From Selaginella moellendorffii (lineage: Eukaryota > Plantae > Lycopodiophyta): DNA of 64,000 bases. Positions 19,702 through 22,724 of this stretch are shown piece after piece. The stretch covers positions 310,001-374,000 of the forward strand of contig NW_003314298.1 of the NCBI RefSeq assembly GCF_000143415.4, written 5' to 3'. Position 1 is the stretch's first letter; every line of letters begins with the position of its first letter. Made by a program: the position numbers and the translations under genes. Below the pieces are notes generated by a model. It made no database searches, was not told where the DNA came from, and worked only from the letters and a program-made list of their open reading frames with translations.

Positions 19702-20844
19702 TCAGACCCATGCTTCAACCATGCTCCTGGTTTGGATTTTAAGCTCGCCGTCTCCAAACGCAGCACTTGGATCCCACCTCCAACTCTTAGAGCTTAATTC
19801 ATAGCTCATCAGCAGCTTAGATACCCACACTGTATTAACCCCGTCGGTGCAGCATAGAAACCAGCCATCGCGATCGGCACGCTGTTGCTCCTGCATAGAT
19901 AGCATCTCACTCTCGAGCACCAAGTCAACCTCCAGCGTCTCACTATCCTGCACCACAGATCTGTGCCTGATCCCGCACACTTGCGTCCCCGCCCCGGTCA
20001 CAATCAGCAGCTGCCCTCCGCAGTGCACTGGCTTGGCTGTCTGCGAAGAAGCGGCGCCGCCATTAAGCCACCAGTACGACCACGAGTCCTCTCGCACGCG
20101 GTAGCTGCTCCGACACCCAGTCGAACGAATACGACACGTCCCCGCCACCTTTCTCCCACGCAAAATATCGATCTACGCAGAGTTGAGGGACGCAGCTGCT
20201 TCTCGCGGCCCACGAGTCGGTTGTGGAATCATAGATCCAGGCGGTGAGCCACCTGACCAAGACAAGCTTGAAGCAGCCAGAGTGCAAGGAAAACCAAGCT
20301 TGAAAGCTTGGTTTTGAAATCCTTTACGCAGGTTTCGATGAGAGTATGGACTTGGGTGTAGCGACCCGACAGTGGATTGGCAACCAGGTAGCGTGAGCTG
20401 CAGCAGCCATACGAGAAGCAGAACAAGATCGGTCCAGGATGTGGAGCAGCACAATACTCGAGGTTGTAGTCTTGCGGGCAGTAGCCATGGAGCGGGAGCA
20501 GCGAGAACTTGGTGCTCATGGGAGGCCCGTGCGCGATCGCCAGCCGGGGCTTTCGGAGCTGATTAGAGGAGTCGCAGAGACAAAATGCCAGAGTGGTGGT
20601 GGTCGCGGTGCCTAGCGAGAAGCTCCGGGCTGCTCAGCCTGGCATTCCAGGCCCTCGACACCATCCTGGCGTTCATGAGCGAGGGCGCGGGCAGCCGGAG
20701 AAGAATGTCGTCCTCGAGGAAGGCCGGGAGGAGGCCATGAAACAGTAATGCCAGATGGAGCTCCTCTTCCTCATGGTGGTGATCTCGGCTGTCATCTCCA
20801 TGGGGTGCTTGCAAGGAGGCAGCTCCTCCAGTGTTTGATCCCAT
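19702..20844 (-). pseudogene. F-box protein with F-box-associated/kelch-like C-terminus, frameshifted
   Basis: LLPAFLEDDILLRLPAPSLMNARMVSRAWN F-box; YLVANPLSG and WIYDSTTDSW lie in other frames, with stops at 20563 and 20063. Confidence 0.7.
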
Positions 20845-20899
20845 ACCTGTTGCTCGCCCGGCACATCAAATGACCACACGCGCGCCTGCTCAAAGCTGC

Positions 20900-22209
20900 T
20901 GCCGCCCCGCTTCTTGGCCTCCTCCTCCTTCCCAATTCCTCGGCCCTGGCACAAAATCGGATAGCCGATCGCATTGACTTGACCTGTTTGTAATGGCTTG
21001 GTCTCCTCGCTTATCTTGAGCTCCTCGCCCGTAAGCTCGCCGCTTCTATGGATCACTCTGGAATGCAGCAGCACAAACTTGCCATTGGCCAGCTCCACAA
21101 CTGCGTTGTGCCATGGCGTTGGAGTGTGGAAGTTCTTCTCCTCGGATGACCGCTGCGCCGCCACCAGGGGTGGATCAAATTGACACCTTTGTTGGGATGC
21201 CTGAAAAAACAGATTTTTTTTTCTTGCTGTAAGGCCTAGGTGATCGTCTCTTTTCGTCAACTTACGGGTGGATTGAGATACGTAGTTGGAGGGGAACCAC
21301 TCTACCATTGCCGAGTATGCGCGGTTCCTCTGGATCATCAAAAAGCCAACTTTGCTGCATAGCTTCTTCTTTGCAGACTTCGTTGGCAGCGCCTTGCAAG
21401 GCTCGTGGTCGTACAAATCCTCCAACATAAATCTGGAGAAGCCACGATAGAGATTCCGTGTCTCTAGATCCTCTTTGATGTGTCTTGTGATAGACGACTC
21501 ATCGCTTCCAAACAAGCACATGAGAGCTCTCCGGGCAGTCTCCGCATTCGAAGTTAGCAACGTTTTGACTGGATGCTCCAAAGTTGTGTTTGAAGATTGA
21601 CAACTTTTCAACCATGTCGAAAAGTCATCCAGTCGATAGAAACTGATCAAGCCTGGATACAAATTGTGTGCCGTCTCTCGGAACATCTCTCCATAGGTGT
21701 CAACGGTTGCATCAGAGCCAACTACGTCAAATAGCTGACAACTCTAAGAACCAAGTTGTACGAGGAATTGCATTTGAGAAAATCTTACCCAGGTCAGAGA
21801 AGCCATGACTGTCGGAAACTATGTTGTAGTGCACGCCGGAGGACACACAGCCTCAACATGCTCCGCAATGATCTTCATGGAATGTATGGCTAGTTCTTCC
21901 GCTTTGTCCGGGAACTTTCCTAGAGTTTTGTCCAGGTTGCACGACTTGACAGAGAAAGCTGCCAGGATGAACTCGAGAGAAATGTCACAGGAGATGTGGT
22001 ACTCGACTTGATCTGAAAACTATGAACCACTGGTCGTGTTTTGGAAAGTAGATGTAGTTTCGTTTGATGATTCCAACAACTTTGTTAGATCCTCCACCTC
22101 TTGACGAGTGTACCTCATGAAAGGTTCCACAAGACAATCTCTTGTCTTTATGCTCTTGTCCAAGATAATTTATTTCGCCTCCCAAGCTGCTAGGACTCTG
22201 AAATACCAT
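20900..22209 (-). pseudogene. Isocyanide synthase (Dit1/PvcA family), fungal-type; two introns (21788-21722, 21265-21201) and about 4 frameshifts; 3' end uncertain
   Basis: Ordered motifs HDQW; FILAAFSVKSCN-LDKTLGKFPDKAEELAI; AVCPP-G..IVSDSHGFSDL|VG.D.TVDTY; LYRGFSRFMLEDL; MIQRNRAYSAMVE; SIHP|HPNKG; FHTPTPWHNAVV. Confidence 0.88.
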
Positions 22210-22724
22210 CCATTTTTGATAAATTTCTTGTAAATGGAGGAGTTTAATTCCGTCCCTTAGTTTAGTGGTCTAAAACTCAACACAAAAAGCTAGGTTTTGT
22301 TCCATGGTTATTATATGATAATTTACCATATAGTATATAATGCTGAGAGTTTATTATAGTGTATAATACGGTCAAGTAAAATTTAATTTGGAATTTTCAC
22401 TATACTTTACAAGTTAAAATATATATTATAATTTTTTGTTTGGAATTACCTCAAATTTCCCCTTTTCTTCCCTCCCTTGGGAGTGTTCTTTTTTCTTCAG
22501 CTTGATAAAAGAAGAAAAAAAAGAAAAAGATGAATCATAAAGACATTCATTCTTTGTTGTTATGATTAGAATACTTTATATCAACTTAGCAAAAATATGA
22601 GAACTATTAATTAAATTACACATTGATCACTAAACAAAATAACAATTATATTTATAAATTACCAATAGATAAATAAACATATAAATTTTATTCTAAGTAT
22701 ATTCCTAACTATTCAAAGAATGGA

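What the first reader, a model, noticed from the sequence alone, without database searches (positions are those of the whole stretch)
20900..22209. Fungal-type isocyanide synthase (Dit1/PvcA) gene resident in a plant genome
Seen: seven colinear motif blocks (DQW; AAFSVKSCN..K..PDKAEELAI; PP-G..IVSDSHGFSD; LYRGFSRFMLEDL; RNRAYS; SIHPHPN; HTPTPWHN), two host-sized GT-AG introns (67 and 65 nt) and about 4 frameshifts, embedded among ordinary plant genes. Known: this family (yeast Dit1, PvcA, IsnA, XanB, CrmA) converts amino-acid amines to isocyanide/N-formyl products in bacteria and fungi, often copper-chelating or antimicrobial. I know of no characterised plant member. Inference: horizontal transfer, probably from a fungus (recalled fungal motifs PAFPCKSSN, SDGHVFSD, HIPTPWHN), followed by domestication. 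This copy looks dead, but intact paralogs may encode an undescribed plant isocyanide or dityrosine spore-wall pathway.
Basis: partly seen in the sequence, partly recalled or inferred. Interest (0 to 1): 0.9.

Follow-up and report, generated by a model that had tools for sequence, protein, structure and literature searches.

The report
Dead fungal-type isocyanide synthase gene, Selaginella
This is a decayed, silent copy of a fungal-type isocyanide synthase (Dit1/PvcA) gene in the spikemoss Selaginella moellendorffii; the family's presence there is already on record, but this copy keeps two intron positions shared with fungal DIT1 genes, which points to a fungal origin.

Summary
On the minus strand at about 20981-22240 lies a PF05141 (DIT1_PvcA) homologue (E 1.6e-32) with all seven motif blocks and two GT-AG introns of 67 and 65 nt.

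The window is Selaginella moellendorffii, and the locus is the old chimeric gene model SELMODRAFT_418146. It is an unprocessed pseudogene:
- It has no start codon and lacks the first ~85 codons.
- It has at least 7 frame-breaking indels, in-frame stops and no normal stop codon.
- 12 of 62 family-invariant residues are lost.
- Four of the frameshifts and one in-frame stop are shared with the colinear second-haplotype copy (SELMODRAFT_410977).
- dN/dS between the two copies is 0.91.
- RNA-seq shows no reads over the gene body.

Intact paralogues exist (at least 6 examined). They have at most one intron and dN/dS of 0.09-0.15.

New here: both introns sit at exactly the position and phase of two of three introns conserved in DIT1 genes of three chytrids and one ascomycete. 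The gene therefore most likely came from a fungus as genomic DNA. The best non-Selaginella matches among 15 billion proteins are chytrids, but AU tests leave the donor lineage unresolved.

Not new: Lim et al. 2018 (mBio) already list the Selaginella ICS proteins, and RefSeq names them DIT1. Five other first-stage notes of this scan flag the same family elsewhere in this genome.

The parts
20981..22240 (-). Whole relic of the DIT1/PvcA-type isocyanide synthase gene (part of the chimeric GenBank model SELMODRAFT_418146). Homologous to residues ~90-518 of the intact paralogue P0003.
   Evidence: tblastn of P0001-P0012 on the window; nucleotide alignment to intact CDSs; Pfam PF05141 on two pieces.
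21822..22019 (-). Stop-free piece holding the LAAFSVKSCN...PDKAEELAI block (PF05141 profile positions 1-60).
   Evidence: E 4.8e-13.
20676..21743 (-). Longest stop-free piece (356 aa). It holds LYRGFSRFMLEDL, RNRAYS and HTPTPWHN (PF05141 profile positions 77-267) and reads through intron B and two frameshifts.
   Evidence: E 1.6e-32.
21722..21788 (-). Intron A: 67 nt, GT..AG, phase 1, after DSHGFSDL. Same site and phase as fungal DIT1 intron i1 and as the single intron of paralogues P0002 and P0006.
21201..21265 (-). Intron B: 65 nt, GT..AG, phase 2, inside the Pro codon of SIH-P. Same site and phase as fungal DIT1 intron i3. Among the Selaginella loci examined it is kept only in this copy and its haplotype partner.
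22170..22172 (-). In-frame TAA, shared with the L003 copy.
22083..22087 (-). 4-nt deletion (frameshift), shared with L003.
22020..22026 (-). 17-nt deletion after ..HDQWF (15 nt and in frame in L003; 2 more nt are lost here), creating a TAG at 22020-22022.
21836..21840 (-). 1-nt deletion in the PPG codons before VHYNIVSD. Specific to the window copy.
21287..21291 (-). 4-nt deletion between MVEW and PLQLRISIHP, shared with L003.
21169..21190 (-). 12-nt in-frame deletion that removes GPKY (window only), followed by a 4-nt frameshift deletion before LVAAQ (shared with L003).
20981..21040 (-). Decayed C-terminus: deletions of 12 and 22 nt (shared with L003) and 34 nt (window only). The RPSHYKQV motif lies at 21004-20981, and there is no stop codon at the family's normal position.
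20566..20865 (-). F-box domain ORF immediately downstream. It is a separate host gene that the old gene models fused to the relic.
   Evidence: PF00646, E 9.6e-5; RNA contigs at 20372-20522 and 20688-20958.

Best explanation
The locus is an unprocessed, transcriptionally silent pseudogene of the DIT1/PvcA-type isocyanide synthase (ICS) family of Selaginella moellendorffii. The family entered the Selaginella lineage from a fungus, most similar to today's chytrids, as a piece of genomic DNA carrying the fungal introns. It then multiplied: many gene models exist, some in tandem arrays. Most copies lost their introns and stay under purifying selection. The window's lineage was constrained for most of its history (dN/dS 0.14 against intact paralogues) and then decayed before the two haplotypes (or recent duplicates) diverged. 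It has no enzymatic function now. Its value is as a fossil, because it is the only copy examined that still has two of the three ancestral fungal introns. Shown here: family membership by sequence, the lesions, haplotype sharing of the lesions, neutral evolution since the two copies split, lack of RNA, shared intron sites, and genomic integration. Inferred: the direction and source of the transfer, and the activity of the intact paralogues (by analogy, conversion of the tyrosine amino group to an isonitrile or N-formyl group).
For: Family: PF05141 at E 1.6e-32 and 4.8e-13. The nearest solved structures are Tyr/Trp isonitrile synthases 9dhm/9dh4 and PvcA 3e59.
Identity of the locus: the exons of SELMODRAFT_418146 match the window at 98-100%.
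Pseudogene: and one search give the lesion catalogue. Four frameshifts, a TAA, loss of the N-terminus and loss of the stop codon are shared with the colinear copy L003, which is 92-97% identical over 23 kb. dN/dS between the window copy and L003 is 0.91. 12 of 62 invariant residues are lost. In two RNA-seq runs, with 1.38 Gb read from each, only 6 and 8 reads fall on the 3.8 kb laid, none fall in 21070-22720, and there are no spliced joints.
Family is functional: intact single-ORF or one-intron paralogues have dN/dS of 0.085-0.145.
Fungal origin: an exhaustive search of 1.84 billion representatives ranks chytrids first after Selaginella, and every hit above 60% identity is S. moellendorffii. 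Introns A and B coincide in site and phase with introns conserved in Phlyctochytrium, Zopfochytrium, Cladochytrium and Coccidioides DIT1. In the tree, the eukaryote clade separates from bacteria at 100/100, Selaginella is monophyletic at 100/100, and Selaginella plus chytrids has 90/91. Mean identity is 40.1% for Selaginella-chytrid, 31.8% for Selaginella-ascomycete and 34.8% for chytrid-ascomycete.
Integration: plant genes flank the locus in both haplotypes.
Against: AU tests do not reject Selaginella as sister to all fungal Dit1 (p 0.495), or grouped with Ascomycota (p 0.286) or Dikarya (p 0.52). The donor lineage is therefore unresolved, and strict nesting inside fungi is not demonstrated.
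Only 25 substitutions underlie the dN/dS of 0.91.
The RNA evidence comes from two runs sampled at about 12% each plus assembled contigs, so low or tissue-specific transcription is not excluded.
Only 9 Selaginella ICS loci were inspected, so another copy may also keep intron B.
No other lycophyte genome could be searched, so the age of the transfer is unknown.
Expression and activity of the intact paralogues were not tested. No Logan (run-assembly) source is listed for any Selaginella ICS protein.
Confidence: 0.87

Rival explanations
1. The gene is functional, and its apparent breaks are assembly or sequencing errors or unusual splicing, as the 2010 gene models (SELMODRAFT_418146 and 410977) assumed when they spliced around them.
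For: GenBank models exist that join the pieces. The longest piece is a 356-codon open frame.
Against: Four frameshifts, a stop codon, the N-terminal loss and the stop-codon loss recur in the independently assembled colinear copy L003. The models skip conserved family motifs and fuse to a downstream F-box gene. dN/dS is 0.91. 12 of 62 invariant residues are lost. No RNA covers the gene body and no splice joints were seen.
Confidence: 0.03
2. The sequence is fungal contaminant DNA mis-assembled into a plant scaffold.
For: The nearest non-Selaginella relatives are fungi.
Against: The relic lies inside 23 kb that is colinear between two scaffolds, with plant genes (Ovate, PB1, aldolase, NUDIX, phosphatase, aldehyde dehydrogenase) on both sides. 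All Selaginella copies form one clade that is at most 46-50% identical to any fungus. Paralogues are scattered among plant genes on at least 8 scaffolds.
Confidence: 0.01
3. The gene is an ancient eukaryotic gene inherited vertically. It was kept in fungi and in the Selaginella lineage and lost everywhere else in plants. The shared introns are then ancestral eukaryotic introns.
For: The AU test does not reject Selaginella as sister to all fungal Dit1 (p 0.495). Shared intron positions fit common descent of any kind.
Against: No other plant or alga appears among 1,277 significant representatives or in the named hit lists. This history would need many independent losses across Archaeplastida. 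Selaginella is more similar to chytrids (40.1%) than chytrids are to ascomycetes (34.8%). The maximum-likelihood tree groups Selaginella with chytrids at 90/91.
Confidence: 0.06
4. The relic has been co-opted as non-coding sequence, for example as promoter or 5' UTR of the downstream F-box gene, or as a regulatory pseudogene transcript.
For: RNA-run contigs and a few reads cover 20688-21069. This is the relic's 3' tail just upstream of the F-box ATG at 20844.
Against: Depth is minimal, DNA carry-over in those libraries is not excluded, and nothing covers the relic body. Nucleotide identity to L003 is lower in the relic (92%) than in the flanks (94-97%).
Confidence: 0.05

Closest known systems
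Intact S. moellendorffii paralogues (RefSeq 'spore wall maturation protein DIT1', e.g. P0003, P0004, P0005, P0006, P0007; SELMODRAFT_417826 = P0002)
   Same: They form one monophyletic family with the window copy (100/100). They are 63-71% identical to the relic's conceptual translation and share its motif order. P0002 and P0006 share intron A.
   Different: They are complete ORFs of 498-521 aa with all 62 family-invariant residues tested in P0003, P0002 and P0006 and dN/dS of 0.09-0.15. They have no intron B. The window copy is truncated, frameshifted and silent.
Fungal Dit1 of the dit cluster (DIT1-DIT2-DTR1; S. cerevisiae Dit1, Coccidioides, and the chytrids Zopfochytrium, Cladochytrium and Phlyctochytrium)
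   Same: They share the PF05141 domain plus the N-terminal extension and are 40-50% identical to the intact Selaginella proteins. Two of the three conserved introns are shared in site and phase.
   Different: In the fungi the gene sits next to a P450 (Dit2-like) and an MFS transporter (Dtr1-like). No P450 or MFS relic lies near any Selaginella copy examined. Fungal intron i2 (phase 0, before RN.AYS) is absent from all Selaginella copies.
Bacterial isonitrile synthases PvcA/IsnA (PDB 3e59) and the Tyr/Trp isonitrile synthases 9dhm/9dh4
   Same: Same Pfam family and core motifs. The intact paralogue matches these structures at E 1e-25 to 2e-28.
   Different: They are only about 30% identical, about 330 aa long without the N-terminal extension, and lack introns. 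They form a separate clade (100/100). They are usually paired with a TauD-type dioxygenase (established knowledge; Lim et al. 2018).
Report of ICS outside fungi and bacteria: Lim et al. 2018, mBio (PMC5974471)
   Same: The paper records PF05141 proteins of S. moellendorffii ('one species of moss'). Its supplement lists SELMODRAFT_410977, the haplotype partner of this locus.
   Different: It gives no analysis of gene structure, pseudogenes, selection or donor. The partner model was dropped from their tree for gaps.

Membership tests
DIT1_PvcA isocyanide synthase family (PF05141) | Significant match to the family profile above the curated cut-off | tested here: met
   113.5 and 49.7 bits against a cut-off of 26.4.
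DIT1_PvcA isocyanide synthase family (PF05141) | Complete open reading frame with start and stop codons | tested here: not met
   No ATG, the first ~85 codons missing, at least 7 frame-breaking indels, in-frame stops, and no normal stop codon.
DIT1_PvcA isocyanide synthase family (PF05141) | Residues invariant across Selaginella, chytrid, ascomycete and basidiomycete members are retained | tested here: not met
   12 of 62 invariant positions are substituted or deleted, e.g. in the LPAFP.KS and SDGHVFSD blocks.
DIT1_PvcA isocyanide synthase family (PF05141) | Isonitrile or N-formyl forming activity on an amino acid | not testable with these tools
   Needs an enzyme assay. This copy cannot encode a full protein.
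Fungal dit gene cluster (DIT1 + DIT2 P450 + DTR1 MFS) | Adjacent CYP56-type P450 and MFS transporter | tested here: not met
   They are present beside the chytrid and Coccidioides genes. tblastx of those clusters against the window and 9 Selaginella loci hits only the ICS gene.
Unprocessed pseudogene | Disabling lesions that are real, not assembly errors | tested here: met
   Four frameshifts, one stop codon and both terminal losses are shared with the separately assembled colinear copy L003.
Unprocessed pseudogene | Neutral substitution pattern since inactivation | tested here: met
   dN/dS is 0.91 between the two copies, against 0.09-0.15 among intact paralogues. The estimate rests on only 25 substitutions.
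Unprocessed pseudogene | Introns retained, so it is not a retrocopy | tested here: met
   Introns A and B are in place.
Unprocessed pseudogene | No mature transcript | tested here: inconclusive
   No reads fall in 21070-22720 and there are no joints in two RNA-seq runs (12% of each run read) or in the contigs of two further runs. The tissues sampled are unknown.
Horizontally acquired gene (fungus to plant) | Patchy distribution: absent from the recipient's relatives | tested here: inconclusive
   S. moellendorffii is the only plant among the hits in the 5.8-billion and 1.84-billion protein libraries. Other lycophyte genomes could not be searched directly.
Horizontally acquired gene (fungus to plant) | Recipient sequences nested within the donor clade in a supported tree | tested here: inconclusive
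   Selaginella plus chytrids has 90/91. AU tests do not reject fungal monophyly (p 0.495), Selaginella with Ascomycota (p 0.286) or Selaginella with Dikarya (p 0.52).
Horizontally acquired gene (fungus to plant) | Donor-type gene structure (shared intron positions and phases) | tested here: met
   2 of 2 Selaginella introns coincide with 2 of 3 introns conserved in three chytrids and one ascomycete.
Horizontally acquired gene (fungus to plant) | Physical integration among host genes | tested here: met
   Paralogues sit beside cellulose synthase, PPR-DYW and kinase genes.

The most novel reading that the evidence does not exclude
The intact S. moellendorffii paralogues are active tyrosine (or tryptophan) isonitrile synthases acquired from a chytrid-like fungus. 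Having lost the fungal P450 and transporter partners, they now work with plant enzymes, for example the plant-type 2OG-Fe(II) oxygenases adjacent to P0002 (a pairing that would resemble PvcA/PvcB). The product would be an isocyanide or N-formyl-tyrosine-derived metabolite, a compound class not described from land plants as far as I know. Possible roles are metal binding, defence or spore-wall chemistry. The window's relic documents the ancestral, intron-bearing form of the transferred gene.
Probability: 0.4. Interest if true: 0.7.

Novelty: already known. Interest (0 to 1): 0.38.

Why it matters
The locus itself is a dead gene, and the presence of this family in Selaginella is already catalogued, so the headline claim is not a discovery.

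The relic still adds one piece of evidence. It preserves two intron sites that are conserved from chytrids to ascomycetes. Transfers between eukaryotes seldom leave that kind of structural trace. It argues for DNA-level transfer from a fungus, not from a bacterium and not through a processed mRNA.

The family is expanded and under purifying selection, and it has never been studied functionally. If the intact copies make isonitriles, that would be a plant route to a metabolite class known only from microbes. It would also be another fungal contribution to Selaginella's unusual chemistry.

Tried and rejected
ESM Atlas look-alike search on the longest piece gave only chance hits at 0.56 (retrotransposon gag) and was uninformative.

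Literature searches for Selaginella with isocyanide, DIT1, dityrosine biosynthesis, horizontal gene transfer or isocyanide synthase found no dedicated study. Only the PF05141 search led to Lim et al. 2018.

A first attempt at a home-made protein-to-DNA dynamic-programming aligner was dropped in favour of a nucleotide MAFFT alignment to the intact CDSs.

AU tests of three alternative deep placements rejected none of them, so the donor lineage stays open.

tblastx for relics of the fungal P450 and MFS neighbours in the window and 9 Selaginella loci was negative.

The ICS-2OG oxygenase adjacency seen at two loci (L004, L092) turned out to be one duplicated segment, not two independent associations.

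Expression of the intact paralogues could not be tested.

A homologue search for the neighbouring 2OG oxygenase was left out, because the gene is split into short exons and has no stop-free reference long enough.

Full report
**What is there**

Pfam scans of the stop-free pieces give PF05141 (DIT1_PvcA). The scores are E 1.6e-32 for window:20676-21743:- (profile positions 77-267 of 273) and E 4.8e-13 for window:21822-22019:- (profile positions 1-60). An F-box domain lies in a separate frame just downstream, at 20566-20865.

**Which genome and which locus**

A protein search returns S. moellendorffii proteins first. The exons of the old JGI model SELMODRAFT_418146 (P0001) match the window at 98-100%, so the window is S. 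moellendorffii and the locus already has a GenBank gene model. That model is chimeric. It takes small upstream exons, skips conserved ICS motifs, and runs into the downstream F-box-type gene.

A second model, SELMODRAFT_410977 (P0008), lies on scaffold GL377579.1. Its 23.6-kb locus (L003) is colinear with window 10170-33350 at 92-97% nucleotide identity and has the same neighbours: NUDIX, aldolase, phosphatase and aldehyde dehydrogenase. From published knowledge that this assembly contains both haplotypes, L003 is most likely the other haplotype, or else a very recent segmental duplicate.

The window's own flanks carry a plant-specific Ovate gene, a PB1 gene and a class-I aldolase. Contamination is excluded.

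**Anatomy and state of the copy**

I aligned the window copy, L003 and the coding sequences of four intact paralogues at nucleotide level and listed every indel.

Lesions shared by the window copy and L003:
- Homology begins only at codon ~90 of the intact protein (about window 22240). There is no start codon, and AT-rich unrelated DNA lies upstream.
- A TAA at 22170-22172.
- 4-nt deletions at about 22085, 21289 and 21171.
- A 22-nt deletion near 21022.
- No stop codon at the family's normal position.

Lesions only in the window copy:
- Two extra bases lost after HDQWF, giving a TAG at 22020-22022.
- A 1-nt deletion at about 21838.
- A 12-nt deletion that removes GPKY.
- A further 34-nt C-terminal deletion.

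Lesions only in L003:
- A GT-to-GA change at the donor site of intron A.
- A 1-nt deletion.
- A 13-nt deletion that removes HTPTPW.

Inactivation therefore predates the split of the two copies, and both have kept decaying.

Of 62 positions invariant across Selaginella, chytrid, ascomycete and basidiomycete members, the window copy has lost 12 and L003 has lost 9.

dN/dS between the two copies is 0.91, from 25 substitutions with dS 0.026. Intact paralogues compare at 0.085-0.145, and the relic against intact paralogues gives 0.14. The lineage was therefore constrained for most of its history and died relatively recently.

Reads from two RNA-seq runs (1.38 Gb read from each) put 6 and 8 reads on the 3.8 kb laid. 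None fall between 21070 and 22720, and no splice joint appears. One contig from a run of unknown type covers 21289-21928 with intron A unspliced. The copy is a silent, unprocessed pseudogene.

**The two introns**

Intron A (21788..21722, 67 nt) and intron B (21265..21201, 65 nt) have canonical ends. Removing them restores the conserved peptide exactly.

Among the Selaginella genes:

| Copy | Introns |
|---|---|
| P0003 (two identical tandem copies), P0004, P0005 | none |
| P0002, P0006 | one intron at the site of intron A |
| Window copy and L003 | A and B |

I then reconstructed exon structures of fungal orthologues from their genomic loci. Phlyctochytrium arcticum, Zopfochytrium polystomum and Cladochytrium tenue (chytrids) and Coccidioides posadasii (ascomycete) all share three introns in the ICS domain:
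- i1: phase 1, after DGHVFSD(L/C).
- i2: phase 0, before RN.AYS.
- i3: phase 2, in the codon after SIH.

Intron A equals i1 and intron B equals i3, in both site and phase, within invariant motifs that leave no alignment ambiguity.

With roughly 1,500 possible site and phase combinations, two out of two coincidences with a set of three or four sites is very unlikely by chance. My rough estimate is of the order of 1e-5, before allowing for proto-splice-site bias.

The simplest reading is that the gene reached Selaginella as fungal genomic DNA with its introns. i2 was lost before the family diversified, i3 survives only in the window's lineage among the loci examined, and the most expanded subfamily lost all introns.

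**Origin**

In a word-indexed search of 5.8 billion proteins and an exhaustive HMMER search of 1.84 billion cluster representatives, the best non-Selaginella matches are chytrids, followed by ascomycete Dit1 at about 40%:

| Chytrid | Identity |
|---|---|
| Blyttiomyces | 49-50% |
| Zopfochytrium | 48% |
| Cladochytrium | 45-47% |
| Phlyctochytrium | 45-48% |

All hits above 60% identity are S. moellendorffii, and no other plant appears.

I built a tree of 51 rows with 11 bacterial outgroups fetched from genome contigs:

| Grouping | UFBoot / SH-aLRT |
|---|---|
| Eukaryote clade separate from bacteria | 100/100 |
| Selaginella monophyletic | 100/100 |
| Ascomycota monophyletic | 100/99 |
| Selaginella + chytrids | 90/91 |

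AU tests do not reject fungi as a clade excluding Selaginella (p 0.495), Selaginella with Ascomycota (p 0.286) or Selaginella with Dikarya (p 0.52). The donor lineage is therefore suggested but not established.

Over the 472 kept columns, Selaginella-chytrid identity averages 40.1%, against 31.8% for Selaginella-ascomycete and 34.8% for chytrid-ascomycete.

The chytrid and Coccidioides genes sit in the classical dit arrangement, next to a P450 and an MFS transporter. No trace of either is found near the window copy or in 9 other Selaginella loci, so only the ICS gene was kept.

Vertical descent from an ancient eukaryote is not formally rejected by the tree. It would need many losses across plants and algae, and I give it about 6%.

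**What it does**

The window copy does nothing as an enzyme.

For the family, by homology to PvcA/IsnA and yeast Dit1 (established knowledge; nearest solved structures 9dhm/9dh4 and 3e59), the expected chemistry is conversion of the alpha-amino group of tyrosine or tryptophan into an isonitrile or N-formyl group. The intact copies keep all family-invariant residues tested and are under purifying selection, so an active enzyme is likely. I could not test expression or activity. No run-assembly source is listed for any Selaginella ICS protein.

**Prior knowledge**

Lim et al. 2018 (PMC5974471) state that ICS proteins occur in 'one species of moss'. Their supplementary table lists S. moellendorffii SELMODRAFT entries, including 410977. 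RefSeq annotates the intact copies as 'spore wall maturation protein DIT1'. I found no paper on their function or origin.

Five other first-stage notes of this scan flag ICS genes on other pieces of this genome.

**Verdict**

This locus is a dead copy. The new element is the fungal intron signature it preserves.

Noticed in passing
window 20566-20865 (-), continuing to about 20066: An F-box domain ORF (Met at 20844) lies directly downstream of the relic. The old gene models fuse it to the ICS pieces. RNA-run contigs at 20372-20522 and 20688-20958 and a few reads at 20816-21069 suggest it is weakly expressed and that its 5' end lies in the relic's tail. The frame changes after 20566, so it may have an intron or be broken too.
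   Followed up: partly
L004:15331-16510 and 19821-20999 (-); L092:1633-2813 (-): Plant-type 2OG-Fe(II) oxygenase genes (PF14226/PF03171) lie 4-10 kb from the intact ICS gene P0002 and 1.2 kb from a truncated ICS copy (P0009). The pairing recalls bacterial PvcA/PvcB. L092 and L004 are duplicated segments (87-93% nucleotide identity), so this is one association, not two.
   Followed up: partly
L006:6346-8027 (+) and L010:5858-7239 (-): A PF02458 'Transferase' (BAHD-type) gene lies 2-3 kb upstream of two different intact ICS paralogues (P0005, P0006). PF02458 is also one of the domains fused to ICS in fungal CrmA, according to Lim et al. 2018. This could be chance or a duplicated segment.
   Followed up: no
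L001 and L002 (GL377593.1, genes at about 1,750,273 and 1,764,233): Two copies encoding the identical 521-aa ICS protein P0003 lie about 14 kb apart. The cluster listing shows many more ICS models on this scaffold and on the 2.09-Mb scaffold, so the family forms tandem arrays.
   Followed up: partly
L092:3950-4721: A truncated ICS copy starts at residue ~258, just after the position of intron A, as if only exon 2 had been duplicated.
   Followed up: no
L009:5001-8247 (Cladochytrium tenue); P0139 (Irineochytrium annulatum): Chytrid gene models fuse DIT1 with the neighbouring MFS (Dtr1-like) transporter into proteins of 881 and 1108 aa. This is either a real fusion or merged annotation. The p450-DIT1-MFS order is conserved from chytrids to Coccidioides.
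   Followed up: no
L007:2918-4969 (+), Phlyctochytrium arcticum: An AMP-binding (PF00501) enzyme gene sits immediately upstream of the chytrid ICS gene, and an OPT transporter lies beyond it. This differs from the p450/MFS neighbours of the other fungi.
   Followed up: no
window 22268-22700; L003:10793-11120: AT-rich sequence replaces the missing 5' part of the relic. L003 carries a 326-bp insertion relative to the window at 22636/22637, and the window has 63 extra bases at 22268-22330. No homology to the ICS N-terminus was found anywhere in the window.
   Followed up: partly
L093:4272-5060 (GL377566.1): Another ICS-like stretch (SELMODRAFT_403268) is only 39% identical to P0003 over residues 41-320 and gives a weak Pfam hit. 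It is probably an older relic.
   Followed up: no
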